A stretch of DNA of 64,000 nt. Origin: Schizochytrium sp. TIO01. Taxonomy: Eukaryota > Protista > Bigyra: Labyrinthulomycetes. How positions within the stretch are numbered: the stretch's first letter is position 1; every line of letters starts with the position of its first letter. The stretch lies in contig SMSO01000033.1 in assembly GCA_004764695.1 (NCBI GenBank), positions 1,612,001 to 1,676,000 of the forward strand, in the 5' to 3' direction. The notes below the pieces were generated by a model. The model searched no databases. It saw nothing but the letters and a program-made list of their open reading frames with translations, and was not told the origin of the DNA. Below are positions 6,639-37,226 of the stretch, in pieces. A program made the position numbers and the translations under genes.

Positions 6639-9600
6639 TTAAAAGCCGAAAATGTTTTTGGCTTTTGCTTTCTTTTTACGCTTCTTCACTAGCGTCGCAG
6701 AATTTGGACCTCTTCCATCAGCTGCCATCCGCTCTCTTCCTAATATTAGCCATCTGCGCATGATTGCTACAGATGCAGGAGATAAATTAAGACGATGACC
6801 TGCAAATGCCGACGCATTATCGAATTTGTCATCATCATCATCATCATCACTTATGTCAGCAGCACGAATACCAAGGATTACACCGCGCTTACGCGCAGAC
6901 TCCTGTGCACGGTGCAACCAGTGGAGCATAATCGCCTTAGATGCTGCACTGAGCACAACAGGCCCGAATATTGTTGGTCGGTCGGGAGCAGCTCCTGGGC
7001 CGCCCTCATAATCACCAGGACCACCTACTCCACGGCGCCCGCCGGGAGCTCCACGTGCTGCAAAGTCGGAACCTCCAACCTTTTGTTCATCACGATGCTT
7101 TTGCACGCACGGCAAGCAAAGGGTGCGGAGAACAGCATGTTTTTGGAAATAGTTCTTCCATGCTACCTGATCAAATTCTTCACTGGGGTGTTCCTGCTCA
7201 AAAGCGTCACCCAGTTTATCAATAGGGGTAAGTAACTCAACTTGAAGTTGTTTGCGGCTTAAGCACTGTTCACACTCAACTTTACGAGCTCTATTGATGA
7301 GCGGCTGTACCGCAGCTCGAAGGGTACGTCGCCGCCGTGCTTGTGCAAGCCAGAGTCGAATGATATTACGAGATGCATTGGTCAGAGTGACTGGCCCAAA
7401 CTTTGGGCGGCTATCGTCTTCCTCATCATCTGAAGATACATCAGGATTAACGCTTCCAAGAATTTTAGTGAGTTGCGCAGTGAGATAAGGACGTGATCGT
7501 CGTAGTGTGCGTGGTGTGAGGATGTTAGGGAGTTGTGCAACAAGCCATGGACGGTTGTAGTCGAGAAACTTGTGACGAAAGGTTTCACTGGTGATCTTTT
7601 GATTCATCAAATAAGCTTCATGAGAAGCACCCTTGATCTTGTCAAGTTCGTCCCAGCGAGGCGCGCCCATATCATCATCATCCATAGTTTGATGCCATGC
7701 AGTATCCTCATGTCGGAGACGCCAGAGACCAACTTTATTGGCAATTCTGACAGATACACGCCGGGTGAGTATACACGAAATCAACACATAGGGAAAGATG
7801 ATGAGTAGGGCAGGATCTCCAAATGCATTGTAATCCATTCGCAACATGATTTCGATTCCCAGAACAAACATCATAATGCCCATAGAGTATAGACAGCATA
7901 TTAAGTAATACTGGCTACTAAAGCAGAATTGATCGATGGTACGCAAAGTCTCCTCAATGCACTCGTCAAGATTATCTTCAAACCCTTTCCAGCGATGTTC
8001 GCGCTGGATGAAGCGATAACGAGTGTAAGTCAAGTAATCATAGATCTTCCACCCATGGAAAAGCTCCTGGGCTTGAAGAATGAAGACATCGGCCAGAGTC
8101 TGAAAAAGAATCAGAATAATAGAAAACCACAAATAGTACTCCATATCCTGGTTTCGGATGCCGTAAAGATCTGGGAGACCAATCTGGTCCCGAAAGACCA
8201 TCAAAATCAAAATAATAAAGGGTTGCATGTACAGAGACATTAATTCCGTAGAATACCCAGAGTAAGCATTGAGAATTGGTTCAACTGTCTCCGACCCCTC
8301 AAACTGTTGCTCAACCTCGCGTTTGGTACCTGGTTTTGGAGTAGCACTGGGTCCGAGAGCTTTTTCCATATCACCCTCGAGCTTTTTCTTAGCAGCTAAA
8401 GCATCCAGTTCAGCTAGTTGATCATCCAAAGTGCGCCCTATATGAAACTTTGCACGTACGAAATCCTTCAACCGTAGCATCCCTTGTCGCATAATGGAAA
8501 AGAATTCATCTTTACCAGGATTCCAGAATACACGTGAAATGATCATGAGACCATTATTAATCACATATGCAACCACCATGTCGAGGAAGTTATTCGCACC
8601 AAATGTAACCAGCCCAAAAACGAGACCAAATGAAACATCATGTGGACATATCAAAAGTTTCTCCGCAAGCATGTACTCCATAGCGAAATCATAGATGATG
8701 TTCACGATTTTCATAAGTAAGATAAAGTACCATAGCACCGTACCATATGAATCCCAATAAGAGAATTCAATGAGAAAGATCAAAAAGACAGAAAGAAATA
8801 ACGACGTGACAACCATCGTACTGCGTTTCCACATCGTTGGCTTCCATGTACTCCTTTCCTTAGTGTGGTGGTCATGCGTGTCTTCGTATAACTGTTCCTC
8901 AATCGAAACCTTGCGGGGAATAAATGCCTGAACACTTACCAGGAGTAGGTAGAGCGCAAGACAAACAAAAGCCAAGCCCATGCGGCCATACCTTGTATCA
9001 TCTACCTCCTCAGGTAAAACAGAAGAGTCCATGTAATGTTTGGGCCATGTCTCTAAGAAGTATGACTCGTCCATGTATGATTCTTCCGCCTCTGAAGTAG
9101 CCTCTGCAAGCTGAACCGCAGTCATATTGTCCGAACCATCAATGCTGAGCGGAGATATCATAAGAATAATCGTTCTCACGAAAGTTTTGCCTTCAAGCAA
9201 AATCCAACATAAAGCTAGCACGCTTCCAAGAGGTAGGACTGCTAAGCTCACTCCGATGAGAGGACCAGGTGTGATGAGTACAAGATACGAGAAGAACCGA
9301 AACTTTGGGGGTTGTTGCAAATGAGTTGTGACCCGATTGATGAACCAGAACATTGCTGAAATGAGAACCGTGAAGATTCCAATAGCGACAAAAAGGTTGA
9401 TAAAAACGACGCGCTTAAAAGCAAAGTTTACGATCAAGTCATAGTACCCTAGCGCACGGAACTCAATATTAAAGTCATAAGCTGTATTGGTCTCATCAAA
9501 GTCAAAGTCATCAAGTACTAACTCGATGTAGATAAGTCGCTTCAGATTAAGATCCACCTGATAGTAGTGCATTTGTAGTGTGATTGACCGAGGAAAGCAT

Positions 9601-11120
9601 TGCCGGCCACACTCATCAGACATTGCATCAGCAGCGTCACGATTCACCTCCATAGGAATAAGCCAATCTGAGGAGCCAGCTGCAACAAAATCATCCACAT
9701 ACAGTCCTCCACGCAGAAACTGTTCTACAGTAATCGGCTCCCACATAAACTCCATCAATGTGGTTCCTGAAGAAACTTCAAACCATCTCGGAGTTAGATC
9801 TCTAGTTGTCAGATCCTCTTCATACGCGCATTGCAACGTCCGAGTACAGTAGTCTGCTATGGGATCCGGCTCCAAAAATGTATAAGGTTCAACTACACGA
9901 ATGTTGTCATAGTCAGGGAGAGCAGCATAATTATAGCGCTCCCAATCTAGAGGAATACGATCGCCATTCTCATCGAAAAGTGGAAGCTCGCACTCTGACG
10001 ATTCGAGCAGATCCCAGATCGTCACGTATGAGTCAAATTGCTTGCAATTAGAAAAAAATGGAAGATAAGGAAGAACGATCTTGTCCAAATTAAAAGACAG
10101 GTCTTCATCAGCAACATCAATGTCCATTTCATGAAAAATCTCGCGGTATTTCACGATCATATCCTTCACCACTATTGGATCGGAGTCTGGTGCATTCCAC
10201 CATTGCTGATCTGTTGTCAGATCATCATAGTCATCAAGAACTGTTGTCGCATCGTCCGTACCGTTATAGCTCACTAAAACACGGCCTTTCTCAGTATCTT
10301 CGTAGCGAGCAGGAAGATTGAGTGGAGGTGATACACTTGTGAGTGTATCTCGACGGAAAATTGCTGCAAACACGTAGTCTTGAACCACTTCTGACTCGGC
10401 AGCGCTAACAATTGGGCTTAGTTTTCGGCGTCCAAATGAATCAGATGGTATATGGCGAGTTGAGTTTGCCCGCTCTGGTCGTGAGATAGTCACCACCGCA
10501 GAATCTTCGAACTGTGGAGTCAGCGAACTAAAGAGACCATGCAAAATATGAACCTCTACGCGGAAAATAACATCTTCAATAGAAACCAGGGAAATAGAAA
10601 ATGTTGAGGTCTTGACAATGTCGTCGCTCAGAAACCAGGTGCTAAGGTCAATAGGTTGATGGCATGGATATACTTCAAGTTCATCTCCAATATTGCAACT
10701 CGAGTCTTCGGCGCACTCTTCCTGCGAAGAAACGGTATATCGCTCGCGATCTGAGTCACATCGCTGCTCTTCACATGTAGAATTAGCTACAAAAATTGCA
10801 ATTCGGTAATGTTCACCATACACGAGATCATCTGGGAGATGTGAGAAATCAAAATCAATCGAAGCTTTGTGAAGGGTTTGCAGTTTGAACCAGGAGCGCT
10901 CATTGTCACGAACACCTTCCTCAAGCTCTTGTCGGTTTATTCTAGTAACAAAGTCATCCCAGCTAACAAGCTCGTCTGTATGATCCGTCCACCATGATGC
11001 TTCCATCTCAGATTTTATACTTTCATATTCAGCTCTTGTCTTGGGAATGGCTTGTGTTGTGGTGTTGAAAATCGTCAAATTTCGAACGGTTTGCGGATAT
11101 GCAGTGGAAAAACCCGGCAT
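6639..11120 (-). CDS. Giant protein segment 6: membrane-proximal ectodomain, ~9-11 TM helices, cytoplasmic tail
   Basis: Hydrophobic segments between ~9420 and ~7740. It has no signal peptide of its own, and a TGA immediately precedes its ATG in frame. Confidence 0.85.
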   Translation of the reverse strand: MPGFSTAYPQTVRNLTIFNTTTQAIPKTRAEYESIKSEMEASWWTDHTDELVSWDDFVTRINRQELEEGVRDNERSWFKLQTLHKASIDFDFSHLPDDLVYGEHYRIAIFVANSTCEEQRCDSDRERYTVSSQEECAEDSSCNIGDELEVYPCHQPIDLSTWFLSDDIVKTSTFSISLVSIEDVIFRVEVHILHGLFSSLTPQFEDSAVVTISRPERANSTRHIPSDSFGRRKLSPIVSAAESEVVQDYVFAAIFRRDTLTSVSPPLNLPARYEDTEKGRVLVSYNGTDDATTVLDDYDDLTTDQQWWNAPDSDPIVVKDMIVKYREIFHEMDIDVADEDLSFNLDKIVLPYLPFFSNCKQFDSYVTIWDLLESSECELPLFDENGDRIPLDWERYNYAALPDYDNIRVVEPYTFLEPDPIADYCTRTLQCAYEEDLTTRDLTPRWFEVSSGTTLMEFMWEPITVEQFLRGGLYVDDFVAAGSSDWLIPMEVNRDAADAMSDECGRQCFPRSITLQMHYYQVDLNLKRLIYIELVLDDFDFDETNTAYDFNIEFRALGYYDLIVNFAFKRVVFINLFVAIGIFTVLISAMFWFINRVTTHLQQPPKFRFFSYLVLITPGPLIGVSLAVLPLGSVLALCWILLEGKTFVRTIILMISPLSIDGSDNMTAVQLAEATSEAEESYMDESYFLETWPKHYMDSSVLPEEVDDTRYGRMGLAFVCLALYLLLVSVQAFIPRKVSIEEQLYEDTHDHHTKERSTWKPTMWKRSTMVVTSLFLSVFLIFLIEFSYWDSYGTVLWYFILLMKIVNIIYDFAMEYMLAEKLLICPHDVSFGLVFGLVTFGANNFLDMVVAYVINNGLMIISRVFWNPGKDEFFSIMRQGMLRLKDFVRAKFHIGRTLDDQLAELDALAAKKKLEGDMEKALGPSATPKPGTKREVEQQFEGSETVEPILNAYSGYSTELMSLYMQPFIILILMVFRDQIGLPDLYGIRNQDMEYYLWFSIILILFQTLADVFILQAQELFHGWKIYDYLTYTRYRFIQREHRWKGFEDNLDECIEETLRTIDQFCFSSQYYLICCLYSMGIMMFVLGIEIMLRMDYNAFGDPALLIIFPYVLISCILTRRVSVRIANKVGLWRLRHEDTAWHQTMDDDDMGAPRWDELDKIKGASHEAYLMNQKITSETFRHKFLDYNRPWLVAQLPNILTPRTLRRSRPYLTAQLTKILGSVNPDVSSDDEEDDSRPKFGPVTLTNASRNIIRLWLAQARRRRTLRAAVQPLINRARKVECEQCLSRKQLQVELLTPIDKLGDAFEQEHPSEEFDQVAWKNYFQKHAVLRTLCLPCVQKHRDEQKVGGSDFAARGAPGGRRGVGGPGDYEGGPGAAPDRPTIFGPVVLSAASKAIMLHWLHRAQESARKRGVILGIRAADISDDDDDDDKFDNASAFAGHRLNLSPASVAIMRRWLILGRERMAADGRGPNSATLVKKRKKKAKAKNIFGF

Positions 11121-32100: not shown

Positions 32101-35100
32101 TGGTCTCGTTGAAACCAAGTGTGGGTACAATATTCTCGGGCTGGGAAGGACTTCCGAAGCTACATCGAGCATTTGCCCAATCCTGCGTTACACCACTTAC
32201 AACAAGCCGTATGGCATGACTGCTTTCTTCTCCGATAAATCCATGATGAGGATTCACAGCATAAAAGTAAGGATTCGTCTCCCCAATTTCAACTTGAAAG
32301 CCAGAATCAACCCAGTGCTCCTGATCCACTGAGAGGAAAATGCCCAGTGACGAAAATTCCAGGAAGGAAGTCACAAGTGGAACACTGCATGCAATGCGAT
32401 CGCTGTCAAGCGGCATTGCAGTTTCATATACAAAACTACTATTGTTGCCGAATCCACATGACAAGGCTCTCACGTTGCCTAAGGCAGGACCAAAAATCTC
32501 AACAATAGATTTACCCAGCTGAACCACTGCCGGTGAAACAGCTGTTACGCTAGGTTCTCTAACGAACGTGACAGATAGAGGTTCCAATGTAGCCGAATCG
32601 GAGATAGAGACGAGAACGGATTGCTCGTACACGAGCTCTTCAACGATAGACCATGCTGGAACTACACATTGAACGGCATGCTCGCTGAGCCATGTAAACT
32701 GCGTCGCTACGACCTGCTTACCCTTGGTAAATGTACAAGTAATATTGCTAAAGTTTTCCTTTGTCTGAAGGTGCCTATTGAAGTTGACTCCGTGAAGTGT
32801 GATATGTCTTTCGTCTGCGATGGTGCTTTTCGAAGCATAGATCACATTTGGTTCAGCATATAAGAGTAGCGGAGCAGCACGGAAGAAAACGCTGGACGTT
32901 GAGGTAGAACCAAGAATGTTTTCCTCCCCATTCAAAGAAACTGTGACTGTAGCAGTTGCTTCGTACGATCTAGTTGGGGAAGGGCAGATCACCCATACTT
33001 CTGTCAGATCATCTGAGACAGACAAAGTGCCTATCATTCGTACAGTTTCCCTTTCGAAATGAAATGAGCACCACGAAGAATCAGCCAGAAGCAGAGAAAT
33101 TTCATCCACTGTAAAAGCGTTGGAAGAATAATCACCTTCCTTTGAGATGCTGATGTTGATAGGTATTGATGCGTCAATAGTAACTTGAGCTGGCGTTACG
33201 TCCAGAATGTGTAAGCTTGATGTGTAAACGAAGTCGTAGGTTGCAACCGTATGGTTGCGATACAGAATATTTAGTTCGACAACACCTTCATAATCCACAG
33301 ATGGTACCAGACAAGATGCGAGCGACGGCGATTCAACGAACATGGTCATGTGGGTTCGTTCGGCACCAAAAGAGCACACAAGGTCATTTTTAGCAGTGAG
33401 CAAATTAGATCCCGTAAGAAATATCGTGTATCCACCAGTTGCGGAGCCCCACAATCCTTTTGAAGGTTGGTTGAAAACAGGATCTTCCTCAACAATTAGG
33501 TTATGTACCTCAGGAAAGGATTGCGTTCGGCCTACAGTGAGAGTGACACTGATCTCACCAGGCCCTGAAAGCACACCAGCTGGTGTTGGGCATGTTGCTA
33601 ATGTAGATGATCTTGCAAGCGCTGAAGTATACGTCTGCGTACCGCTTACGTTGAAGAAACACTCCATATCATTGGCGTTGAGTAGGAAATTCTCGCCATG
33701 TAGGTAAAGTAGATCATTGCCGTCTAGACCGATATGGGTTGGGTGGACCCCTTGAACTTTGATTGCTGCATATGTAATCAGAGGAATTGCATTTGTCCAA
33801 CGATTTAAATTGTTGGTAAGACGAAGCAGGACAGCACCTTCTCGAGACATTCCGGGACTAGTTAGCGTATCGCACAAGAGCTCGTCGCTTTCAGGCGAAA
33901 AGCGAAGATCTGAAAGAAAGAGATTTTGACCAAACTGGCAGAACCAGCCAGTTTCTCTAACCATATCGCCATTTTGCAAACTTTGTGCATGCTGCTCTCG
34001 AAGAGTTACAAGCAAAAGGGGGGCATGTATACTAAGGACAGAGGGTGTAGATATCTCAAAACAGACTTTGCGTGGTGTCACGTGCTCCAGCGTGGGCGCG
34101 TCAACACTGTCACTATCAAACATAATATCCAGATAGCGGGTTGAGGCATAGTCGTCAGCGATGTCGCCATCTATTGAAAGCTTAACATCATCCCCACCTT
34201 GAAAGGAGTTTGTACGACTGTAGACTAGATCTGATAGGCCTGCGTTAATATCACGCAATGATCCTGTAAAGGTCATATTAGATTCATTTTCACCTGATCC
34301 ATTGATGAATGTTAAGCCAATAGCGCTGCCTAAGGAAAGTGTTGCTTGACCACTCGAAACGAGAAGATTGACAGTATAAATTTGCGTATCATCCTGTGTA
34401 GAACTGCTCAGGTCCATATCTGAAATTGCATATCCACGCAGCCGAAGGGCCGATGCTTCTGGAAGTACTACTGTTGGGGCATCATTGACAGGGAGCACAT
34501 CAATAGGAATTATAACACGATCTGTAAGGTTTGTTTGCGGGGAGGCCTCAGTATTTGCAGAACCTAGGCCTAAATCATTAACTAGTATGACCAGATTTTC
34601 TTCTGAGATTCTACCGTTAGAGTTTTCGTCACCAAGATAGATAATCCTTCGTACTGCATGATTAAGGGCACCAAGAGTGCCAAGTACAGTAATCGTGCGG
34701 TCATTTAATCCTGACCCAGTGATAAACTGCAAATCATTTGTGCTAGCAAGACTTATAGTACCTGCGGAAACAGAGAGGGAAACCTGGTATAGGGGTTCTT
34801 GACCATTGCTATGAATTGATCTCCAATGGTCCATGTCTACGTCATGTATAGTGACACCATAAATTGCAACAGCCTCGTCTTCGTCTGTGACTTGATCGTT
34901 TGGCATGGACAGGGATGGGGGATCATTCACAGGGTTGACATAAAGATTGATAGTCCTTGAGGCAACCTTAGGACCGTCGACACTAAGTCCTGCATTGCCT
35001 TGATCATTGACTGTGACTGTAATGTTATCATAGCCATTCCAGTTGAGAAGTCCAATGTACGAGAAACTTGAAAGAGCATCATTCACAGATTCAAGATCAC

Positions 35101-37226
35101 CTGAAAAAGTGACAATCTCATCTCTGTCTCCTGTACCCATGGCAAACGCAAGTTTGTTGCGCACATCTTCATCTAAGGTAATCATACCATTGAACGTTTC
35201 GACGGTAACCGAGAAAATTGAATCAGGGCTAAGTTCCACATCTTTGTCGGCGATTCGAAATCCAGTAATTCGACGTGCCCCATCTTCCTGCAGCTGTAAT
35301 GTAACGTTGTCTCCTTGCTCGACAAGAAGGATCTGAGTTTCTTGATCTGCAGGTTCATAGTATACCTCTGGAGCCTGATTGAAGGCATGGTAAATAGTGA
35401 TAAGAGCAGGTCCTCCACCGAAGCCGTTAAGCAGTTCCTGAGCAGTTTGCCATGCAATATTGTCGCCCCCTTCTTGTCTCCACTGAAGCTTTATGACATG
35501 GGTTCCTGGTGAAAGATTAAGCATTACAGAGCCACGCATAGTTTCAGTAGTGCGAACAAGTGTATCCATAGATGAGCCTTTACCATAAATAACTTGACCA
35601 TTTACCACTAGACGCAATGATAATGCGCTCCAGCGCTCCCAGGTCCAATAGTCCATGTCAGGACGGCCCAATTGAGAAGTAGTCAACGCAAAGCTCACGT
35701 GAACAGTATTAGTATTTGCTACAAGGTTTAAAACATTCACCGCGTTAGGAATATCGAACCATCCGTCTGCGTTAGTGGATGCAGATTGAAGAGCAATTTT
35801 AGTTTTGTCAAGCGTGGCTTTGGAGTTTGTTCTGCTCATAATTACGGCTGTGTGCTCGCCTTCGATGATGAGACTGCGCCCTGAGATGAACCCTCCAAAC
35901 ATTGATGGTTGGGAGAACCAAACAGGTACAGTTGTTCCCCATTTACGCCACTGCAAAGTTACGGTGTGCTTTCCAGCAGCTAATGGTAATAAGAGATCCC
36001 CCGTTAGTACTGAGGAACGATATGTGCGTGACACTGTTCTAAAGACAGAGCCAGATTCACGATATGGAACCCCATCAATAACAAGACGAGTTCCAAGAAT
36101 ATCTGCCTTGCTCAAGACATCTGCATTTGGTGCAGATTGAGGACGGACTTGGAATGGAGTATAGTAAGTGCATCGTCCATTGCCGTGGAAGCGCAAAACT
36201 AAGAGTGCAGTCAGGAACATCAACCCAATCTGCGCTGGAGCTGGAAATTCGAGCTCCGGTTAATGGTTGAGCAGTATAGAAATACTTGTGACGTGCTTTT
36301 ACCATGATACTTCGTGTGCCACCCTGGCCAAGAAGGAGTTGAGGCCGAATAGACCAACTTCGTACGCGATTTCCCCAGCGCCGCCATTGCAAGGTAGCCG
36401 TGTGGTTCCCTGCAGGTAAGCTGGCAATGGCATGGCCGAGAAGGTTTGTTCGTCCTTGTTCAAATGAACTAAGTGGACCTGTATGCGAGCCTGATTGTCT
36501 AAAGGGGACACCATCAATGACAAGACGCATTCCAAGCAAGTCGTCTCCCTCCGACCACCCCAAAGGGTCTGCTCCTGGTTCATAAGCTTTGTCTGCTAGC
36601 ACTGTTGCGGTGTATGTTACTCGAACAGTATATCCCTTATCGAGGACAAAGGTGACGCTTGTATTCGCAACGTCGAACCATGTACCCCCGTCTTCTGCAT
36701 TCAGGATAGCGCTGCTTGTAGGCTCCACGCTCCACAGCAGACCATTATCAAGACTTCCAGCTCCTCGAGCCAAAACAATAAGATACGCTAGGAGAAGGAC
36801 AACCATAGACCCAAATGACTGCCCCCACGAGTCCATATTTGCACGTGCTCGAGTTCTCTGCTGGCGTCTACACAGGGTAGCTCCTGTAGTAAGCCCTGTC
36901 TTGACATTTTTGTATCTTTGGTGGTGTTTTTGGCATTCTCTGATGTGTTTTGAGGCCTCTAATTTGTTCTTGAGTCCTAGTTCTTCAGATGCATAAGTGG
37001 CACTTAATGAGATACCAGCAATACATTGCCTCAGACCTCTTCGGCCGGTATTGGGGTCGTCTCTACGCGTGACCTCAGAGGCAAGTGTTGGTCTAGCCAC
37101 TTCCATTGCCACAGTCTTCATTTTATTGCATTTATGTGTCATCTTCTCTGCCTCGGACCACCTTGAGCTCCGACCGGTGGCGTTCCCGTTTCCTAATTCC
37201 ACATGCGCATTCGACTGTTGGAGCAT
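6639..37226 (-). CDS. Giant (~10,060-10,190 aa) multi-pass cell-surface protein: head repeats, cadherin-like, ~60 IPT/TIG, GCC2/GCC3 Cys repeats, ~10 TM; reconstructed across five 1-nt frameshifts; start at 36836 or 37226
   Basis: Six overlapping same-strand ORFs whose domains continue across each junction. The frame changes +1,+1,-1,+1,+1 sum to +3. A signal peptide occurs only in the first ORF and TMs only in the last. Confidence 0.8.
11029..17358 (-). CDS. Giant protein segment 5: IPT/TIG domains, then GCC2/GCC3 (ephrin-receptor-like) Cys-rich repeats and a final IPT
   Basis: Many CPxGxYC/CxxGTY motifs at ~11810-13810. Confidence 0.85.
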   Translation of the reverse strand: MTCWCVASLGLQVITQLSIVASEAKHFTLQQSFNFHGSEGHCSTPDFAEDDENHHRFLTNRTIWVGLASIEDGRPWTISEQIFTSVPQAVIRSIQPTSGSMYGGTVVLIRGSGFPASGQLHCQFNQGTLSYLVNARRRSSTLLECLSPDFSKHSPQNVIVSVLLNGKKDFVGLEVNGPLIFRYVPLPRIIQMSPSIVRNLGGETITLFGSLFPLKDFENGSEIWCRFGGLVMTPATILSETEALCRTPSTLGELGPQENSFELAIELSGGNGVEYHKPKLNTETLKLTVVAAPTLSNISPTFGSFLGGTVLAISGENFLKTEFCEFRMRGDASDAIRVQAISVTETRLECIVPARPDDRVHYAYITLVGATTTEIARFDYIRDPILHNSSPSIVHVDGGVTIKLFGNHFRQEMETMRCVFTDPDGSTAITQAVMISSEEAECTVPLASSVTVENSVVQLTLNGQELSNSLNLLRWWRAEFIGSLSPAGGSVEGGIITYMTLSEASASTLQKASVMCSIGDSASRAVLDKVSRTVACIVPPSPGHSVQTTKVQVSFDGGQHYVETGFDFSYVRAPKVVKVTPELSDLVDGTVVQIELAEVSPIFTSHSLLDLEGAASESCVELSSNAASKVLSCEINPSLSNQPGNEMILQLQSKGDSGEVLYTPVYRLRNVGRPEVTRLSPEIGYTEGNFEIVVLGHYFVNTDALACKFGGSEALVPAFYISSKEIRCTAPAHAVGPVIVEVTHNGVDFSDGAQVLQYVNGPQIFSLSPDNGPTDGGTWVSVHGMGFLPSSGKFPARCRFGDTETNIAEVVNSTTLRCLAPPYLGRASIASVAFEVSLIDADGKGALSKSTMRFTYLRRPKVLRVYPSSGSYIGGTETLIAVENLHVDSANQSGALLCKFGDSALTPGSLALSYKTRIDLGVSNRISLVACKTPARSEGSSRSEKVFVQISQNSGADFTTASTVEFNYQDEVPSIESIFPLSGPAQAGGTVLTIHGTGFMSSQSLTCRFDGSVSRLARFVSSSEILCQTPPAFSKSGLVDGVSVEISNNGVDFVYAGFKFVYYPDPSVHAVIPSRIVGFGGIPLFVKGSHFKNTTELSCWFGESYMVSALFISPSLVSCTIPTLKASDPSDMLVRVSNNGHDLTTTKVFATIEKGSQPGNYVAMGSLLESPNGTVVSKPYMTNFTLCSPGTFQPRAGQSTCLECPVGYFCPDHGLSKPILCLPGFVCDVLGLREPRTACPAGHFCAPGTKTANLTAFQHSGQMKGETPTKPYFVGLTDDLWSRSALTGFLQFMWASSGSDWVLSRRAGSATGYSSLGHSDSPGYSFDQKYNAKDNSVEIETAPFAEIPRPCPAGTFCRSGVSNITPQLSNFSTPQRCHDGFFCPPGSSMPEGSGACPSGHYCPTSDGALEAIPCPPGTHCPGVGNLKPVDCFPGTYNRFEGQANCTVCPVGHICPGWQRTEPVICPAGFVCYTEALSAPIILCPAGYYCSEGTLTLIRPDHVDSSDVACMPEPRTTDGVPIYPQVGTSCLEHNITVVREELLDMLASTLSPTYLQVVNASLRPLPCAPGTFCLGGVAHNTTIDWVPDTPEGAEAPQTCTEGAYCEWASSTPGGTGACHRGHYCPPGSAYPIHAPIGTFASLTGSIVPTLCFPGTYAPQNSSTECRVCPAGFTCQGYGTYEPTICSAGTYRSLADDVTCKLCPVGTWNQFRGATDISLCEPCPSSRVCGVEAMSNLTQSTACPSGHVCPQGTDSSAQFSYQVPAGYFAYDSTTPDDIFSLKCPEGNFCERGTKGYLRERNKCVAGYYCPPASAAAETMRNRCPRSTSSDSGSSDLTDCEIAGVDVCDKEYGTRSHGTWGWYIQEKIYLPTLTYTTMDGTERAFDSASGSSTSGYIEAEVEVVQRILVVDEDASSPIWSNDTVHVERVCPVQVPAFGGTFLTVIGRNFFNIATTVCRFTVIDHESDAFVLEYGLPSINPPLSSTANILTVPAVFESRTRIRCRLPSRASFAADGANAVETVKYLSVSVSNDGFYFGDTSASIAYVEGSTDLSSGEITSLDLDRIGAEHSDCTGEAISLHPLNAGFFHCISANRSKFDDFQHHNTSHSQDKS
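17246..20026 (-). CDS. Giant protein segment 4: tandem IPT/TIG domains
   Basis: Same IPT motif; the ORF begins mid-domain (SCVSPP). Confidence 0.85.
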   Translation of the reverse strand: MVSCVSPPAFDLSPAEVKVRISTNGGVDYSSNELSFTYSAPPYLLGLQTPKGPWEGGTRIRIKGFDFKPSYSLMCTFTLSRSATAIPLSTEAHYVSPTELWCLSPPFGNSGSPVQVGVTSRGQPLPALCESKDLVFLPYRVLGTKTVTPSRGSALGGIKVRVEFYTDLKHTEESVELIRCRFGTSASVPGRILSSSAKISDLRRVEVECLSPGWPTKEEETVSVGVTLNGEDFYTFPDQKFTFVAHSFDGTMKPQFGPASGGTVLQFQNMRIALSAGAAMWSCTFGSDASEVPAYQLDSSTLSCQTPEGNDGESVIVTLLETISRHVLYRGSFQYQSVLLIAPEGIEPFNVIRFSESTLFHIRGEGFPIMDTLACVFRDPETHDTITESISYLETDNVASCEMGSITEMLWSSLASLEVCISGNGGADVACDTISIAEPLSVLSAEPLRGPRSGGTLVEVKFLWGGILDAYYGPQGFTCRFGNTLVEATELSGTPSYRRLACITPASANTEQGSDEVKFSISWNGKVYSEMQSGSIFTYFDDLSEAHANANPTLGTTEGGEHIYMTGVLDHEKVTHCGFVKIGEKLPFAQIAAKRPDDFGFYCEAPAVELKSGDVHLSTSIIVSYNNGAQWSSTSRGAPYTFYSVPVVRAVEPSSTFANRRTTIDVIGDGFSVSSTSNQALLCVFEDPLSEHSDSFMSTEASFVSRHRVRCSVPETLESERVYLVRVSNTPNAVSVLDYAELQVLPLVELREVEPRYITTHATKPSSVELSIVHSELLYASDHRYALMCSFTADNDFRAETPAALDETLDKVICPLSFIPLQKATSHRKVSVSLRSSLIAGVHISHAPQEISFTAFPPLDLISISPSFGQLRGGTELNLTLDNPVPRLLHDMLVCSFSWIAGDNPAQHRRVGGQTLYTAAKFQFPW
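19975..31563 (-). CDS. Giant protein segment 3: tandem IPT/TIG domains (3862-aa ORF)
   Basis: Recurrent PxxGxxxGGTxxxxxGxxF...CxF...CxxP...SxNG motif about every 100 aa. Confidence 0.85.
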   Translation of the reverse strand: MPQGFYVRFLRRKPASLHQFTRKISSSNQINCHVPQSLYGKLDNATLGSDRLCLRLSIDEGETFSPIHLGPRITRSLDSAHFSPNIWWVDDESGSLKITWEGVESIGALDPSVQAKLACKFLDLQGQVLGISTASVHIGENLETTVVCLPFEQLPTKSSGSIDLQYVSNNGDEVSLLAGQRPFFRVIERPHIVRLSHIKGTQEGGEKVLLQGFHLNGAHFSSTNLLCAFGQKIVQARLISDHTLECVSPAYDQNIAVPVLVSFNNGKQWTCNTKDATVCLFTYVEAVLELSSVNPRILWPGYQLSVNGHGFLDGNVEACVFRFVGQSWTSHITSRATIISNNELTCSVPNHNSPLSAIQDLEVLELEVGLWTESGRLVQGAVNSTSHNVRILPLSLFSLIEPSFGPSLGGSLVYLESSANLYQFADHLACSVSGVRVKVTLVEQNVLACEMPSLALLPQDTEGVELIPIEVSLNGRDFLSATPFFRYIPTLVLESAKPSTVVLGMTKFITFITSSSSMALWKVFAESGSDSIFCRFFQNEGSRVVDVPVHIQPGVDVIGCSLTQFESSISENMSGWWRSILLTVHTEEALSTGLPIQILERSPRAESVEPSIVTEGTSLLVRGSNLLFSETMQCGFGDPIIATSEATVDEQAQTLECNMPRHIYNRLISTGNVVEETAVRISLNGVDFSPLETAPFVRVVKASGTSAAAEGISDVRLLHVVPRFGDIYGGTVITIDGKGFDLYLSTLQVFAPRCIFQSTASHASFSEVSRPAQVLNGTHLTCVTPNHGVQGVAILRVAFWEQDQGQYGTVKFNYAPRPEIFRVTPSAIPAGTSAISFRIHANGLVSSPSLSCHFGDVAGKVVGIISSDGRSVLCEPISIAPLSDEKKYDSLEVMVSNSADEVSSPSLTPVYIHAPMTLTSVKPLNIRAGESNDLRLFGFGFVPAVEMSCVFGPNLLYTRAKFISEEELSCEVPAYLFTPGQYSISLSFHASSTSIDSSFKLVVVPAPSNALPIGTPLSGPLSGGTKLNIPISNDVDPDRSLVCSFEFTNPGESPIQALAWVENSSVACLTPNVESVYLNQTYPQQAVVQVQDKVTGEVVIASQFSFVTPLRLVTASAPSFISSYGGAPVILDGYGFEALDASPICRFASDQNTILGNTLGYIAHIDGRRRLVCITPDLANFFSEVLAGLTVEVSTNNGADFSLPILTGMQTIESANLSTTMPPQIIVDHTGKVLSPQTLVLQGDKFTSASAQYCYLTGATPAFTEAFFINETTVLCEMPESWQVIGDLGNVARLRICANDLEPLENFPSIDISISELPAIVESVPSSCLSEEGTELTVGFSTVLPDTETLSWQCVFKCDELTLGASNLSYTGKCMSPSLPLKFRESGALKTGCALYLATQHEVSSGELGKLLDERQGFPVSFAKPPQVVSRDETGTEVTHIVSMSSDISQSIQVMLETELRLNRGAWNIPIVPHCRYRFYKRVIFEDESIGAPVDFLQVETGFFGPAPGMITCPFPGVASIQAALDSTTWSASEDFVYLDVSYNGVDYSTKSVRIAMLPESVLSVVEQGLVSTQTAWSDYSSSSELILTLTDASLALVETLVDLQVPIALRCRFNGQEVSSANIDQSEGVVLCPLPLLVDSSTEMKVELSTFTTPESFVDLNVVVRPAAHPFQITGIDPASGSLSGGTLVNLFLASSELVRSFPSPSNFACIYTFENSDEVHVEATDVLDNGIVCQTPTVDQEQDVYLSIRLLRENSAHDLLVQTPSSSIAVFHFVAQPQIFSVEPSIVQVMSSEKENAATITMNGADFLVDGVDHTHCMWFKASEEHNNLVDGIPSQAVVISSSVLHCPVPSDLLLYENETMFEVRVTSNFADLTESFAIVSVIPELAIVSNEPSIGFQSGGTHILISGRNLFVEFLYTCDFYSVEGQNRVASTSAFWQDSHHLECRSPAFHSLGAFYIRVRSESPSGESSWVRSEGPLFFEAVSNPVVVDAAPAWADPYSPFTLRLKLVEACVTQFDKLISLETPFFAKVGEGKGVCAKSSKEGLVNKTWDIVCEVPMCSSAKCSDLNAVSLQIGETERDSATVFWDHGQELQVYRAPQAIVANPQTKTISATRATLVRVSGAGFSSTIDLGCAICDAKLSSCIKSRRVLYHSNSMVSCEIPGFIPFLGYQEAEINLARLYVRNDINQWPDDNLQDVIISQKYGDQNEIAFVSIQAIGDVSILRTDPEIPEPGQLVNLHVSMLPLKIPVNCDFGMVQTSAMVIDKHIVACVVPSALEMDFRNENVTLHLLFGSRADVQVESLPFHLRFRRRSLSDYSHSNANTTELIPKSGPILGGTLVTVTLASPIKSSKSTIECQFINSQGQTKFGIVHTLSEDGMRLTCITPQQKGPTISTLRVLQHGVDVVALGTFTFRQAPFVEQSTTSVLPYSPTVSSNVIELSGSGFSSGSLQCKFLRDCFSCHENATYALVSPGHTLSASQAICWLPEGIHDYFGAWSNVKICVSIDEGQSFSQSSVSIELVPYWEIVEVESAMIFAGLGAPLSFLKIYGKNFPANLQLFCLYDNDIEQVQNASFVNNSTLLCPLSSGLFSSGAGHKTVSIRVTDRPGESQISNSELYFVLERAPTISFQEVSDCVLHGRCGVFIINTELADDLTSYSIRCKDSRENHLAVVNLDFGNLLVCALPEIPSEYIRISLNDGLQWIDVQVPVEAWSSFGVTEYFEPTMVPQDGEAVLRIVGQGFMLSKSYTCIFSDRKQKSAAVVVSESEIKCAVPKAVSEQEFQAQRLSVTLQHDSPLYRIEVGHLDVYAEPRLGALIPSQISGVLVEDIVVHGSGFLPATTLMCRVQGYNIAASFLSATAIKCHLPALLEARPGDTFPVGIAINGENYVYTSTNLTVVERFAVDSIKPSNIIVDPKTGLFDFNIVLKKSQALRMVAPVCAITFGSSGQVPILLNVSLSQPHVVRCSGSIMRNRIDFHHSMHATLSFSPNFPGHALTEVSANTAVFLAPILTSTMDKRFIQPGLQNSLKFEGQGFRFNSTYNCLFTVLDEASMRKKWQSRAIVKSSELIVCDTINLTTPGIVSVEVVLEGLEHRLISSMDGTTTLVLEVLPAPRLLGVSPSIALSLGGASVTVYGAGFATDDELLCVWSSQDQQLQVHTSASVLSHGTAECESPLWPSELPPGTSRMVKVRLQGNFGVSAESFPFQLLAPVVVSRAEPTIGPKSGGTPIRILGTFNSLSDTETSPLNAACIFGELRVREPATVISSREIICIAPPLEQLRITDSQVLETTEVGIQIVYGDQPSSASGYIPFTYQDDLILDSLTPNSGSTFGGTPIVVSGYHFSSRDLLVCRFEFPGGDRYSVQGNFVSESQIHCESPRVSQPGSALISISRNGVDFSGSLPWPFVFHPVTTIAGFAPSFGWKSGSTAVSIFGTNIPRSPLLRCEFGYIAVPATWLSPNSVTCLTPAAVSTGKVNIRLSTNGVDAIGVGEFTYVPPIEVQNIIPRAGPARGGTSIRFSLLWDNTLDLESLEDELKTLKCEFQALHANVKSYGAVSKASTNETNVWMCTTPSRSKMSYADDIVVRLLLHEDQTLSEFHFSYHQKVLVHNIWPLSYNSQAGASTMHIIGEGFPNITDLSNDHMFQCKFVKSGIADYFSDARRHSSSLLSCKVPESLSQGIYSFSLVLEGMEVPQRQSSKTLAFQVLDGIGIDNFEPKSGPLFGGSPVYLYGSMLSGVELGDAVCQFGSAGLVKATLVDNGILLCIAPALKWATQEQSEFVIDLKVSLDKESYVNVGEFTYRHVPELESIVPFEAPATGGVQALVSGSNLLEKILPVNLVILLSKGMQFLPLWYRASVLLRLIFLPRR
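31487..36223 (-). CDS. Giant protein segment 2: head repeats 2-3, cadherin-like repeats, first IPT/TIG domains
   Basis: VNPVNDPP, LPVNDAP and TFSGDLESVNDAL motifs, then P..G...GG..I.L.G.N....C.F....C..P IPT patterns. Confidence 0.8.
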   Translation of the reverse strand: MMFLTALLVLRFHGNGRCTYYTPFQVRPQSAPNADVLSKADILGTRLVIDGVPYRESGSVFRTVSRTYRSSVLTGDLLLPLAAGKHTVTLQWRKWGTTVPVWFSQPSMFGGFISGRSLIIEGEHTAVIMSRTNSKATLDKTKIALQSASTNADGWFDIPNAVNVLNLVANTNTVHVSFALTTSQLGRPDMDYWTWERWSALSLRLVVNGQVIYGKGSSMDTLVRTTETMRGSVMLNLSPGTHVIKLQWRQEGGDNIAWQTAQELLNGFGGGPALITIYHAFNQAPEVYYEPADQETQILLVEQGDNVTLQLQEDGARRITGFRIADKDVELSPDSIFSVTVETFNGMITLDEDVRNKLAFAMGTGDRDEIVTFSGDLESVNDALSSFSYIGLLNWNGYDNITVTVNDQGNAGLSVDGPKVASRTINLYVNPVNDPPSLSMPNDQVTDEDEAVAIYGVTIHDVDMDHWRSIHSNGQEPLYQVSLSVSAGTISLASTNDLQFITGSGLNDRTITVLGTLGALNHAVRRIIYLGDENSNGRISEENLVILVNDLGLGSANTEASPQTNLTDRVIIPIDVLPVNDAPTVVLPEASALRLRGYAISDMDLSSSTQDDTQIYTVNLLVSSGQATLSLGSAIGLTFINGSGENESNMTFTGSLRDINAGLSDLVYSRTNSFQGGDDVKLSIDGDIADDYASTRYLDIMFDSDSVDAPTLEHVTPRKVCFEISTPSVLSIHAPLLLVTLREQHAQSLQNGDMVRETGWFCQFGQNLFLSDLRFSPESDELLCDTLTSPGMSREGAVLLRLTNNLNRWTNAIPLITYAAIKVQGVHPTHIGLDGNDLLYLHGENFLLNANDMECFFNVSGTQTYTSALARSSTLATCPTPAGVLSGPGEISVTLTVGRTQSFPEVHNLIVEEDPVFNQPSKGLWGSATGGYTIFLTGSNLLTAKNDLVCSFGAERTHMTMFVESPSLASCLVPSVDYEGVVELNILYRNHTVATYDFVYTSSLHILDVTPAQVTIDASIPINISISKEGDYSSNAFTVDEISLLLADSSWCSFHFERETVRMIGTLSVSDDLTEVWVICPSPTRSYEATATVTVSLNGEENILGSTSTSSVFFRAAPLLLYAEPNVIYASKSTIADERHITLHGVNFNRHLQTKENFSNITCTFTKGKQVVATQFTWLSEHAVQCVVPAWSIVEELVYEQSVLVSISDSATLEPLSVTFVREPSVTAVSPAVVQLGKSIVEIFGPALGNVRALSCGFGNNSSFVYETAMPLDSDRIACSVPLVTSFLEFSSLGIFLSVDQEHWVDSGFQVEIGETNPYFYAVNPHHGFIGEESSHAIRLVVSGVTQDWANARCSFGSPSQPENIVPTLGFNETTSELLCGYPAQSFFPGTLPIYVAVNEIDFVDTGLLFSLHFPLRVFDVSPSVVLVNGGSLIRVNVENAVDSVSLSCVFFDSDSQLTFLEDAYLVGHSLVECVTPVIRTAMSTMHVYVLHRNEDISDLPNDQCVGHCTIDFVAQPLISDVQPDIIMFAETGENTKLSVLHVELSPPLLLTSNASRILCEISTEKTSITASVYAENL
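36075..37226 (-). CDS. Giant protein segment 1: signal peptide (MDSWGQSFGSMVVLLLAYLIVLARG, ATG 36836) plus head repeat 1 and the start of repeat 2
   Basis: Hydrophobic signal; the motif LGMRLVIDGVP..SGS...AGNHTATLQWR recurs in the next ORF. Confidence 0.75.
   Translation of the reverse strand: MLQQSNAHVELGNGNATGRSSRWSEAEKMTHKCNKMKTVAMEVARPTLASEVTRRDDPNTGRRGLRQCIAGISLSATYASEELGLKNKLEASKHIRECQKHHQRYKNVKTGLTTGATLCRRQQRTRARANMDSWGQSFGSMVVLLLAYLIVLARGAGSLDNGLLWSVEPTSSAILNAEDGGTWFDVANTSVTFVLDKGYTVRVTYTATVLADKAYEPGADPLGWSEGDDLLGMRLVIDGVPFRQSGSHTGPLSSFEQGRTNLLGHAIASLPAGNHTATLQWRRWGNRVRSWSIRPQLLLGQGGTRSIMVKARHKYFYTAQPLTGARISSSSADWVDVPDCTLSFALPRQWTMHLLYSIPSPSSICTKCRCLEQGRYSWNSSCY

What the first reader, a model, noticed from the sequence alone, without database searches (positions are those of the whole stretch)
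6639..37226. One hidden ~10,000-aa intronless giant receptor/adhesin rather than six genes
Seen in sequence: six overlapping minus-strand ORFs. Domains are cut mid-motif at each junction and resume in the next frame (for example GSNL|FGENITCKFG and LYS|QVRPQ..LGTRLVIDG). There is one signal peptide at the 5' end and a single TM block at the 3' end. Joined length is about 10,064 aa from ATG 36836. Order: 3 head repeats, 3-4 cadherin-like repeats, ~55-65 IPT/TIG (estimated from ~6,700 aa at ~105 aa each), GCC2/GCC3 Cys repeats, IPT, ~550-aa juxtamembrane domain, ~10 TM, signalling-like tail. Inference: a rod potentially hundreds of nm long, with a ligand-binding tip coupled to a multipass sensor. 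It is conceptually similar to fibrocystin (IPT arrays), polycystin-1 and alveolate CRMPs, but I do not recognise this combination as a described protein. Candidate roles are zoospore/flagellar surface sensing or ectoplasmic-net adhesion.
Basis: partly seen in the sequence, partly recalled or inferred. Interest (0 to 1): 0.88.

Follow-up and report, generated by a model that had tools for sequence, protein, structure and literature searches.

The report
Giant IPT-rod membrane protein gene
Six overlapping reading frames are pieces of one roughly 10,000-residue surface protein gene of a thraustochytrid-like protist, a long rod of Ig-like domains ending in a multi-pass membrane module of an uncharacterised family; the five breaks look like single-base assembly errors.

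Summary
Six overlapping minus-strand ORFs (6639-37226) tile 30 kb with no in-frame stop, joined by five one-base frame changes (+1, +1, -1, +1, +1).

They are one gene. Relatives from oomycetes, ochrophytes, Bigelowiella and dinoflagellates carry the same IPT array and C-terminal module in single ORFs of up to 7,926 aa. Three of these also carry the triple head repeat.

The domain order is confirmed:
- signal peptide
- 3 head repeats
- about 3 cadherin-like units
- 57 IPT/TIG domains
- a Cys-rich Ephrin-receptor-like region
- one more IPT
- a juxtamembrane domain
- a 10-11-helix membrane module
- a tail with a CxxC...CxxC domain

The breaks are most likely consensus indel errors. Eight of 18 dynein heavy-chain genes in this assembly carry the same kind of lesion, including one-base homopolymer deficits inside invariant motifs. 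No nonsense codon appears in any of these genes. A shift-at-stop-codon model is rejected.

The scan had already noted parts of this gene on this window (s1-828508, s1-828543), and other giant IPT proteins elsewhere in the genome.

The parts
6639..36836 (-). The whole gene as read here: ATG at 36836 (M131 of the first ORF), stop at 6641-6639; about 10,064 codons once the five one-base frame changes are allowed for
   Evidence: ORF tiling. Length arithmetic: 30,198 nt, minus 4, plus 1. Single copy in the assembly.
36750..36836 (-). Predicted signal peptide (MDSWGQSFGSMVVLLLAYLIVLARGAGSL). The 130 codons upstream, up to ATG 37226, are open but basic and match no relative.
   Evidence: Hydropathy scan and translation. 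The choice of start codon is inferred.
35354..36746 (-). Three tandem head repeats of about 150 aa (motifs W[FV]D[VI], RLV[IV][DN]G, TLQWR.WG). Repeat 2 is cut by junction J1.
   Evidence: A profile built from repeats 1 and 3 finds repeat 2 at 1.2e-19. It also finds three copies at the N-end of P0023, P0026 and P0133. No Pfam family. Atlas lead only: Bc2l-C_N lectin, score 0.90.
36078..36259 (-). Junction J1, +1: the interval where both frames are open. The shift lies near 36143-36161 (LLYSI|QVRPQ), about 25 codons before the upstream frame's stop.
   Evidence: Gap-free alignment to repeat 1. The P0133 alignments switch frame at 36150/36103.
34124..35341 (-). About three cadherin-like units bounded by VNDPP/VNDAP-type linkers
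   Evidence: Pfam Cadherin_4, E 5.1e-6, at residues 424-497 of piece 2. Linker motifs.
13894..34024 (-). IPT/TIG array: 56 of the 57 detected Ig-like domains, with several gaps of 90-270 aa that may hold diverged domains
   Evidence: Pfam TIG, E 1e-82 and 9e-82, plus TIG_plexin and Anth_Ig. Own-profile count.
31490..31569 (-). Junction J2, +1, inside an IPT domain. The site is not resolved; candidates are an A4 run at 31497 and the CTC-TAG stop.
19978..20140 (-). Junction J3, -1. An IPT domain is split at GSNL|FGENITCKFG. The T4 run at 20090-20093 is one T short of keeping the frame.
   Evidence: Upstream frame covers profile positions 2-26 and downstream frame covers 28-88. Sequence.
17249..17388 (-). 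Junction J4, +1. An IPT domain is split between profile positions 37 and 47. There is no homopolymer of 4 or more in the interval.
11809..13806 (-). Cysteine-rich region: 52 Cys in 780 aa and about 20 C-x2-G-x-[FYH]-C units (Ephrin-receptor-like / GCC2_GCC3 type)
   Evidence: Pfam Ephrin_rec_like, E 4.7e-9, two stretches. Motif counts.
11218..11592 (-). Last IPT domain, conserved in all relatives just before the linker
11032..11120 (-). Junction J5, +1, in a linker that is 50-90 aa longer here than in five relatives. The site is unresolved (T5 run at 11112, T4 at 11071, or AGC-TGA). A GTGAAG...AG intron starting at 11147 cannot be excluded, but it lacks the GTAAGT and ACTAAC signals of a verified intron in this genome.
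9426..10988 (-). Juxtamembrane domain of about 520 aa. Its last 220 aa are modelled as a beta-rich domain with pLDDT 75-97.
   Evidence: 41-44% identity to oomycete and metagenome relatives. Model. Its fold was not searched on its own.
7692..9434 (-). Membrane module: 10 hydrophobic segments, one of which is 30 aa long and may form a hairpin. Eleven helices would give N-terminus outside and C-terminus inside. A helical insert, inferred cytosolic from that count, follows the sixth or seventh helix.
   Evidence: Hydropathy. AlphaFold model: pLDDT 89, pTM 0.90. VIA-align hits to TMEM16 and OSCA.
7905..8066 (-). Most conserved stretch of the family (ELFHGWK.YDYL.Y.RYRF..RE.RWKG...LDECI....RT.DQ.CFSSQYY), between the third-last and second-last membrane helices
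   Evidence: Invariant and near-invariant columns of alignments A1 and A2. Coordinates.
6642..7721 (-). Tail, inferred cytosolic. It holds a CxxC...CxxC domain (7107-7274) and three copies of a basic amphipathic motif (7326-7406, 6885-6977, 6726-6791).

Best explanation
The six ORFs are one gene for a giant type-I-like multi-pass surface protein of about 10,064 aa. It belongs to an uncharacterised family found across stramenopiles, Rhizaria and dinoflagellates.

Shown:
- An N-terminal signal peptide, three head repeats and about three cadherin-like units.
- A rod of at least 57 IPT/TIG domains and a Cys-rich Ephrin-receptor-like region.
- A conserved C-terminal cassette: last IPT, juxtamembrane domain, 10-11 membrane helices, and a tail with a four-cysteine domain. 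The cassette is 38-44% identical to oomycete and metagenome proteins of 4,284-7,926 aa.

Inferred:
- The five one-base frame changes are consensus indel errors of a long-read assembly, and the gene is intact in the organism.
- The head binds a ligand or surface at the end of a rod about 200 nm long.
- The membrane module, whose confident model most resembles TMEM16 and OSCA/TMEM63 channel-scramblases, turns binding or pulling on the rod into ion or lipid movement.
- The conserved tail acts as an intracellular regulatory or docking part.
For: One gene:
- The ORFs tile 30 kb with no in-frame stop.
- IPT domains are split exactly at J3 and J4, and head repeat 2 at J1.
- The C-terminal 1,200 aa find 1,256 representative proteins, many of 6,000-7,926 aa with the module at their C-end.
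- Named examples include Aphanomyces invadans XP_008870714.1 (7,478 aa), Albugo CCA22724.1 (7,926 aa) and Saprolegnia XP_012207173.1 (6,655 aa). Transcript-derived ORFs come from Cantina and Gymnodinium, the latter labelled complete.
- P0001, P0151 and P0014 align on both sides of J5.
- P0023, P0026 and P0133 carry three head repeats, IPT arrays and the C-terminal module in one ORF.
- A paralogue of about 12,300 aa at C30:431232-468059 has the same cassette.

Breaks as errors:
- Of 18 dynein heavy-chain genes in the same assembly, 10 are single ORFs and 8 carry one-base frame changes of both signs.
- Four well-placed -1 breaks are homopolymer deficits inside conserved dynein sequence: C7 to C6 in GIKLTKEPPQGLRANL, A4 to A3 in the GVGGSGKQS P-loop, and T4 to T3 and A6 to A5 at two further sites. 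J3 is of the same type.
- More than 25 frame changes were seen in these genes, and not one nonsense codon.
- The most conserved part of the gene lies downstream of all five breaks and is open for 1,493 codons.

Membrane module:
- Model with pLDDT 89 and pTM 0.90.
- OSCA alignments begin at the first helix. TMEM16 alignments begin after it. This fits OSCA's extra TM0 (PMC6235563).
Against: - No reads, cDNA or independent assembly of this species could be consulted. The breaks may therefore be real.
- Break density here (5 in 30 kb) is about twice that of the dynein genes (about 1 in 14 kb).
- Ten dynein genes have no break at all, so errors are unevenly spread.
- J1 and J4 are not in homopolymers of 4 or more.
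- Foldseek finds nothing.
- Pfam finds no Anoctamin, RSN1 or TMC signal in 55 family members.
- hhalign against this genome's own OSCA and anoctamin genes gives probabilities of 1% and 0.07%.
- Function, ligand and location are wholly inferred.
Confidence: 0.7

Rival explanations
1. The five frame changes are real mutations. The locus is a recently inactivated pseudogene, or a gene decaying in a cultured strain, of the same family.
For: As assembled, no protein longer than 3,862 aa can be made. Break density is about twice that of the dynein control. J1 and J4 are outside long homopolymers. The paralogue also has two breaks. One dynein gene (C35, near 2.21-2.23 Mb) has six or more breaks, so some loci might truly be decaying.
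Against: There is no nonsense codon in 30 kb here, in 37 kb of the paralogue, or in the broken dynein genes, against more than 25 indels. Decay by mutation should give both kinds of lesion. All 57 IPT domains and the 1,493-codon C-terminal piece downstream of every break are still open and 38-44% identical to distant relatives. Identical homopolymer deficits hit invariant dynein motifs.
Confidence: 0.17
2. The frame changes are real and are bypassed during expression, by programmed ribosomal frameshifting (Euplotes-like +1 at shifty stops) or by insertion/deletion RNA editing. Several first-stage notes raise this for the genome.
For: Four of the five shifts here are +1. J2, J4 and J5 could lie at CTC-TAG, TGG-TAG and AGC-TGA. 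The paralogue's +1 break is at CCA-AAA-TGA. Other readers listed +1 breaks at stops elsewhere.
Against: J1 lies about 25 codons before the stop, and J3 is a -1 in a T run. In pooled data from 16 +1 breaks, ORF overlaps average 135 nt. A shift-at-stop model predicts 66 nt (P = 0.0007). A random-indel model predicts 104 nt (P = 0.07). The -1 breaks fit the random-indel model too. Both signs occur (about 16 to 9). The dynein +1 site at NPK|CITMGELYG is not at a stop.
Confidence: 0.04
3. J5 is not a frame error but a short spliced intron (about 113-185 nt, GTGAAG...AG) in the linker before the juxtamembrane domain, so the gene is not strictly intronless.
For: This gene has 50-90 aa more than five relatives exactly here. 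Their alignments stop at 11152-11230 and resume at 10991-10922. A GT at 11147 and several in-phase AG sites exist. The genome does have introns.
Against: The one verified intron (dynein gene on C4) has GTAAGT, ACTAAC and a YAG end, and none of these is present here. Both frames stay open across the interval. Every other break is a plain one-base shift.
Confidence: 0.12
4. These are six independent genes that happen to abut.
For: Only the mechanical ORF list. Three pieces start with ATG.
Against: Domains are split at the junctions. Only the first piece has a signal peptide and only the last has membrane helices. Relatives hold everything in one ORF.
Confidence: 0.01

Closest known systems
Uncharacterised giant 'IPT/TIG domain-containing' proteins of oomycetes and other SAR protists (Aphanomyces invadans XP_008870714.1, Albugo laibachii CCA22724.1, Saprolegnia parasitica XP_012207173.1, Bigelowiella natans Bigna1 127040, and Gymnodinium and Symbiodinium transcripts)
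   Same: Homologous C-terminal cassette (last IPT, juxtamembrane domain, membrane module, tail) at 38-44% identity over 1,300-1,460 aa. Long IPT arrays of 39-52 domains in the oomycete proteins. An Ephrin-receptor-like Cys region.
   Different: This gene is longer (about 10,064 aa). It adds a triple head repeat and cadherin-like units, which are absent from the oomycete proteins but present in three metagenome or run-assembly relatives (P0023, P0026, P0133). As assembled it is interrupted five times.
TMEM16 / OSCA-TMEM63 / TMC channel-scramblase (TCS) superfamily
   Different: No sequence relationship is detectable. The large helical insert sits after the sixth or seventh helix, not between TM2 and TM3 as in OSCA. 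No member of that superfamily is known to me with a giant ectodomain (own knowledge).
Alveolate cysteine repeat modular proteins (CRMPs) of Toxoplasma, Plasmodium and Tetrahymena
   Same: Cys-rich EGF or Ephrin-receptor-like modules, followed by a C-terminal multi-pass block and a proposed contact-sensing role (PMC9670195, PMC9815656). The present family does reach alveolates, in dinoflagellates.
   Different: CRMPs have 9 predicted helices (5 in Tetrahymena) and no IPT rod. No CRMP was retrieved by any search, including one seeded with the dinoflagellate member. Homology remains untested.
Fibrocystin (PKHD1) and plexin-type IPT proteins
   Same: Extracellular arrays of IPT/TIG domains; TIG_plexin hits.
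   Different: Those are single-pass proteins. No G8, PbH1, Sema or PSI domain was found. The array here is several-fold longer.
Polycystin-1
   Same: A large modular ectodomain on an 11-helix membrane part.
   Different: No PKD repeat, REJ, GPS, PLAT or PKD_channel hit. The membrane model does not retrieve TRP or polycystin channels.

Membership tests
SAR giant IPT-rod proteins with the conserved C-terminal multi-pass cassette (database entries only, no published name found) | Homologous juxtamembrane, membrane-module and tail cassette at the C-terminus | tested here: met
   phmmer E = 0, 41-51% identity, module at the C-end of proteins of 4,963-7,926 aa. blastp 38-44% identity over 1,306-1,459 aa.
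SAR giant IPT-rod proteins with the conserved C-terminal multi-pass cassette (database entries only, no published name found) | Long IPT/TIG array followed by an Ephrin-receptor-like Cys region and a last IPT | tested here: met
   57 IPT domains here against 39-52 in oomycete members with the same profile. PF07699 is present here and in relatives.
SAR giant IPT-rod proteins with the conserved C-terminal multi-pass cassette (database entries only, no published name found) | Encoded as one uninterrupted ORF | tested here: inconclusive
   Five one-base frame changes in the assembly. Controls point to consensus errors, but no reads were available.
TMEM16 / OSCA-TMEM63 / TMC (TCS) superfamily | Ten-helix fold, plus TM0 in OSCA | tested here: inconclusive
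   [not shown]
TMEM16 / OSCA-TMEM63 / TMC (TCS) superfamily | Sequence signature (Pfam Anoctamin, RSN1_7TM, TMC) or profile-profile similarity | tested here: not met
   No such Pfam hit in 55 members at E up to 10. hhalign probability 1.0% against this genome's OSCA genes and 0.07% against its anoctamins.
TMEM16 / OSCA-TMEM63 / TMC (TCS) superfamily | Ion conduction or lipid scrambling through a subunit groove; dimer | not testable with these tools
   Needs reconstitution or electrophysiology. Two copies of the module exceed the size limit of the complex predictor.
Cysteine repeat modular proteins (CRMP) | Cys-rich EGF or Ephrin-receptor-like modules before a C-terminal multi-pass block | tested here: met
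   Ephrin_rec_like, E 4.7e-9. 10-11 helices. CRMP features as given in PMC9815656.
Cysteine repeat modular proteins (CRMP) | Homology of the conserved core (two EGF-like domains plus nine helices) to Plasmodium or Toxoplasma CRMPs | not testable with these tools
   No CRMP sequence could be obtained by reference. Searches seeded with this gene and with a dinoflagellate member returned none.
Fibrocystin / PKHD1 | IPT array with G8 and PbH1 domains and a single membrane helix | tested here: not met
   IPT present, but no G8 or PbH1, and the membrane part is multi-pass.
Polycystin-1 | PKD repeats, REJ, GAIN/GPS, PLAT and a PKD_channel domain | tested here: not met
   None found by Pfam at E up to 0.01. 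The fold of the juxtamembrane domain was not searched on its own.
Programmed +1 frameshifting at shifty stop codons (Euplotes type) | The frame change lies exactly at the stop codon of the upstream frame | tested here: not met
   J1 lies about 25 codons before its stop and J3 is a -1 in a T run. The pooled overlap lengths reject the model, P = 0.0007.

The most novel reading that the evidence does not exclude
This family is a single-chain 'tether plus channel' mechanosensor. A head-tipped IPT rod about 200 nm long is covalently fused to a membrane module of the TMEM16/OSCA/TMC fold. Pulling or binding at the tip would gate ion flux or lipid scrambling directly. This would be a protist counterpart of the hair-cell tip-link-TMC apparatus. 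It would be conserved across stramenopiles, Rhizaria and dinoflagellates, and possibly be the stock from which alveolate CRMPs derive.
Probability: 0.2. Interest if true: 0.85.

Novelty: new member of a known kind. Interest (0 to 1): 0.55.

Why it matters
If the gene is intact, it encodes one of the largest single-ORF proteins of this genome. It is also a well-preserved member of a family that is widespread in SAR protists, including oomycete pathogens and diatoms, and that I found in no paper.

The family joins an extreme extracellular rod to a conserved membrane module. The only structural neighbours of that module are the channel-scramblases that underlie osmosensing, touch and hearing. That gives a concrete, testable idea of how flagellates, zoospores or net-forming cells might sense contact.

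Practically, the result warns that this assembly carries one-base indels about once per 6-14 kb of coding sequence. These indels fragment long genes and mimic programmed frameshifts.

Tried and rejected
- Independent copy of the species: the search for homologous proteins with the N-terminal 400 aa of the last piece gave 36% identity at best. The representative search gave 51% at best.
- An exact-pattern scan of metagenome contigs for J3, with four or five T, found nothing.
- There is no second copy in the assembly.
- Euplotes-like +1 frameshifting: considered because of other readers' notes, and rejected by site mapping and the overlap-length test.
- Pseudogene: disfavoured by the lack of any nonsense codon.
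- Membrane module: no hit in Pfam, in PDB sequences by profile, in Foldseek against PDB or in the ESM Atlas.
- hhalign against this genome's OSCA and anoctamin genes gave nothing.
- CRMP link: the profile search and the search seeded with the dinoflagellate member returned no apicomplexan or ciliate protein. Both are word-limited, so this is weak evidence.
- Head repeats: no Pfam hit even at E up to 10. The Atlas lead to the Bc2l-C_N lectin (0.90) is untested.
- Literature: searches for IPT/TIG giants in oomycetes, diatoms or thraustochytrids, and for CRMP together with TMEM16/OSCA, found no description of this family.
- Genome identity: I could not identify the genome or its sequencing platform from papers.
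The head and the first 290 aa of the juxtamembrane domain were therefore not modelled.
Full report

Yes. The ORF listing gives six minus-strand ORFs at exactly the stated coordinates. Measured stop to stop, adjacent frames overlap by 182, 80, 163, 140 and 89 nt. The window holds no N. The frames (end coordinate mod 3) run 2,1,0,1,0,2, so the five junctions are +1, +1, -1, +1 and +1 shifts.

From ATG 36836 to the stop at 6639 is 30,198 nt.

Hydropathy shows a signal-like segment right after M131 of the first ORF. The only strong membrane block lies at residues 571-1118 of the last ORF.

**2. Domains**

- Pfam finds TIG (E 1e-82 and 9e-82 in the two largest pieces), TIG_plexin, Anth_Ig, a weak Cadherin_4 and two Ephrin_rec_like stretches. 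It finds nothing in the first or last piece.
- A profile iterated on the gene's own repeats detects 57 IPT domains. Several gaps of 90-270 aa may hold diverged copies.
- A profile built from head repeats 1 and 3 finds repeat 2 at 1.2e-19.
- The cadherin-like part has about three units with VNDPP/VNDAP linkers.
- The Cys-rich part has 52 Cys in 780 aa and about 20 C-x2-G-x-aromatic-C units.

**3. One gene or six?**

The C-terminal 1,200 aa were scored against 1.84 billion representative proteins. This gave 1,256 hits at E <= 0.001. Many are proteins of 6,000-7,926 aa with the match at their C-end.

Named members:
- Aphanomyces invadans XP_008870714.1 (7,478 aa)
- Albugo laibachii CCA22724.1 (7,926 aa)
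- Saprolegnia parasitica XP_012207173.1 (6,655 aa)
- Pythium, Thraustotheca, Skeletonema, Phaeothamnion and Chrysophaeum proteins
- Cantina (transcript ORF of 5,327 aa)
- Bigelowiella natans (4,732 aa)
- dinoflagellates: Gymnodinium smaydae (a transcript ORF of 4,837 aa labelled complete) and Symbiodinium

Further points:
- P0001, P0151, P0014 and others align to piece 5 and piece 6 consecutively, so they span J5.
- P0023, P0026 and P0133 carry three head repeats at their N-end, IPT arrays and the C-terminal module in one ORF.
- J3 splits an IPT domain between profile positions 26 and 28. J4 splits one between 37 and 47.
- J1 splits head repeat 2 with no residue missing relative to repeat 1.

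The six-gene reading is excluded.

**4. What are the frame changes?**

*Introns.* They are not introns at J1-J4, because the protein continues without a gap. J5 lies in a linker that is 50-90 aa longer here than in five relatives. A GTGAAG...AG intron is conceivable there. However, it lacks the GTAAGT, ACTAAC and YAG signals of a verified intron in a dynein gene of this genome.

*Programmed frameshifting.* Other first-stage notes propose genome-wide +1 ribosomal frameshifting at stops. I tested this in three ways.
- The shift at J1 lies about 25 codons before the upstream stop, and J3 is a -1 in a T4 run.
- As a control I took the 18 dynein heavy-chain genes of the assembly. Ten are single ORFs of 4,172-5,003 aa. 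Eight are broken by one-base shifts of both signs.
- From 147 kb of coding sequence I computed how far off-frames stay open. A shift at the stop predicts ORF overlaps averaging 66 nt, and a random indel predicts 104 nt. The 16 pooled +1 breaks average 135 nt. The stop model is rejected (P = 0.0007) and the random-indel model is not (P = 0.07). The nine -1 breaks fit the indel model as well.

*Real lesions or assembly errors?* The well-placed dynein breaks are telling:
- GIKLTKEPPQGLRANL needs C7 where the assembly has C6.
- The P-loop GVGGSGKQS needs A4 where it has A3.
- Two more breaks are T4 to T3 and A6 to A5.

J3 is of the same kind (T4 where T5 keeps GSNLFGENITCKFG). Across this gene, its paralogue and the broken dynein genes I counted more than 25 frame changes and no nonsense codon. 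The one apparent in-frame stop is flanked by two compensating shifts. Mutational decay should produce both kinds of lesion, whereas long-read consensus error produces indels only. The best-conserved part of the gene also lies downstream of all five breaks and is still open for 1,493 codons.

I therefore put about 0.75-0.8 on assembly error, about 0.17 on real recent lesions, and a few per cent on a bypass mechanism.

Caveats:
- Break density here (1 per 6 kb) is about twice the dynein average (1 per 14 kb).
- Errors are unevenly spread. Ten dynein genes are clean, and one has six or more breaks.
- J1 and J4 are not in long homopolymers.

**5. How it probably works**

The ectodomain is a head of three repeats with no recognisable family. 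It sits on cadherin-like units and at least 57 Ig-like domains. At 3.5-4 nm per domain (own knowledge) that is 200 nm or more. The five ectodomain pieces carry 63 N-glycosylation sequons.

The conserved cassette starts after the last IPT.

*Models.* A model of the last 1,200 aa, built with 39 relatives, has mean pLDDT 75. A model of the membrane core alone (window 7692-9434, 55 sequences) has pLDDT 89 and pTM 0.90.

*Searches that found nothing.* Foldseek against PDB, a PDB sequence profile search, and Pfam on 55 family members.

*VIA-align over 48,161 representative chains.*
- Eleven of the top 22 rows belong to this one superfamily. The other rows are designed helical proteins and other helical or repeat proteins, most of them matching only part of the model around the helical insert.

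*Second look.*
- The next family scores 4.8.
- OSCA alignments start at the first helix (model residues 9-11 to chain residues 3-4). TMEM16 alignments start after it (model residues 34-37).
- This matches the published relation in which OSCA has an extra TM0 before a TMEM16-like ten-helix core (PMC6235563).
- Eleven helices would also put the giant N-terminus outside and the tail inside.

I rate a true fold relationship at about even odds.

The mechanism I commit to: the rod presents a binding head far from the cell. Load or binding is passed through the juxtamembrane domain to a channel- or scramblase-like module. The tail docks cytosolic partners. Only the anatomy is shown; the rest is inference.

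**6. Comparison with known systems**

- The gene is a member of the unnamed SAR family above.
- It is not a fibrocystin (no G8 or PbH1, and multi-pass).
- It is not a polycystin-1 (no PKD, REJ, GPS, PLAT or PKD_channel).
- CRMPs share the Cys-rich-plus-multi-pass logic (PMC9670195, PMC9815656). The family does reach alveolates. No CRMP was retrieved, however, and I could not bring a CRMP sequence into the session, so homology is untested.
- I found no paper on this family.

**7. Verdict**

The single-gene reading is supported. The claim that the combination is undescribed is true for the literature I could search, but not for sequence databases. The interruptions are most likely artefacts.

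Novelty: a new member of a kind known only as database entries. Interest is moderate (0.55). It rests on the size and reach of an unstudied family and on the unexpected channel-scramblase-like membrane module.

The scan had already noted parts of this same gene on this window (s1-828508, s1-828543). It had also noted other giant IPT proteins elsewhere in the genome (s1-833163, s1-833260).

Noticed in passing
G000:C30:431232-468059 (+); loci L008, L009, L004-L007: A paralogue of about 12,300 aa with the same C-terminal cassette (34% identity). It lies in three overlapping ORFs (1,299, 4,929 and 6,079 aa) joined by a -1 break at 435077-435128 and a +1 break at 449823-449863 (CCA-AAA-TGA-A). It lacks the head repeats. 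Only 11 IPT domains were detected in its last 6,079 aa, so it holds other domain arrays.
   Followed up: partly
G000 dynein heavy-chain genes; loci L010-L025 (e.g. C24:4603001-4620000, C30:7418001-7435000, C34:2184001-2201000): Eight of 18 dynein heavy-chain genes carry one-base frame changes of both signs. Several are homopolymer deficits inside invariant motifs (C7 to C6, A4 to A3, T4 to T3, A6 to A5). None has a nonsense codon. This bears on every 'programmed frameshift' note made for this genome.
   Followed up: yes
G000:C35:2211001-2228000 (loci L014, L015): One dynein gene has six or more frame changes, including two compensating shifts around an apparent in-frame stop. This is either a locally poor stretch of assembly or a truly decaying copy.
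   Followed up: partly
G000:C4:1212001-1229000 (loci L020, L021), minus strand, gene-oriented 7451-7645: A verified spliceosomal intron in the dynein AAA1 P-loop region: GTAAGT ... ACTAAC ... ACAG, about 125 nt. It is a useful reference for splice signals in this genome.
   Followed up: partly
window 58081-59163 and 59172-62480, minus strand: Two adjacent ORFs (360 and 1,102 aa, neither with a Pfam family) lie 8 nt apart in frames that differ by -1. This is possibly another long gene split by a one-base error.
   Followed up: no
[not shown]
   Followed up: partly
window 2553-3794 (-), 38036-41632 (+), 42012-44951 (-), 51964-53019 (-), 56361-57719 (+): The flanking genes are ordinary eukaryotic housekeeping genes, each in a single ORF: a Cullin-binding (DCN1-like) protein, RMC1, SPT5, an FHA protein and a TPR protein.
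   Followed up: partly
window 35354-36746, minus strand: The ESM Atlas places a head repeat nearest to unnamed bacterial clusters. At 0.90 it also points to the Bc2l-C N-terminal lectin domain, a TNF-like trimer. It is untested.
   Followed up: no
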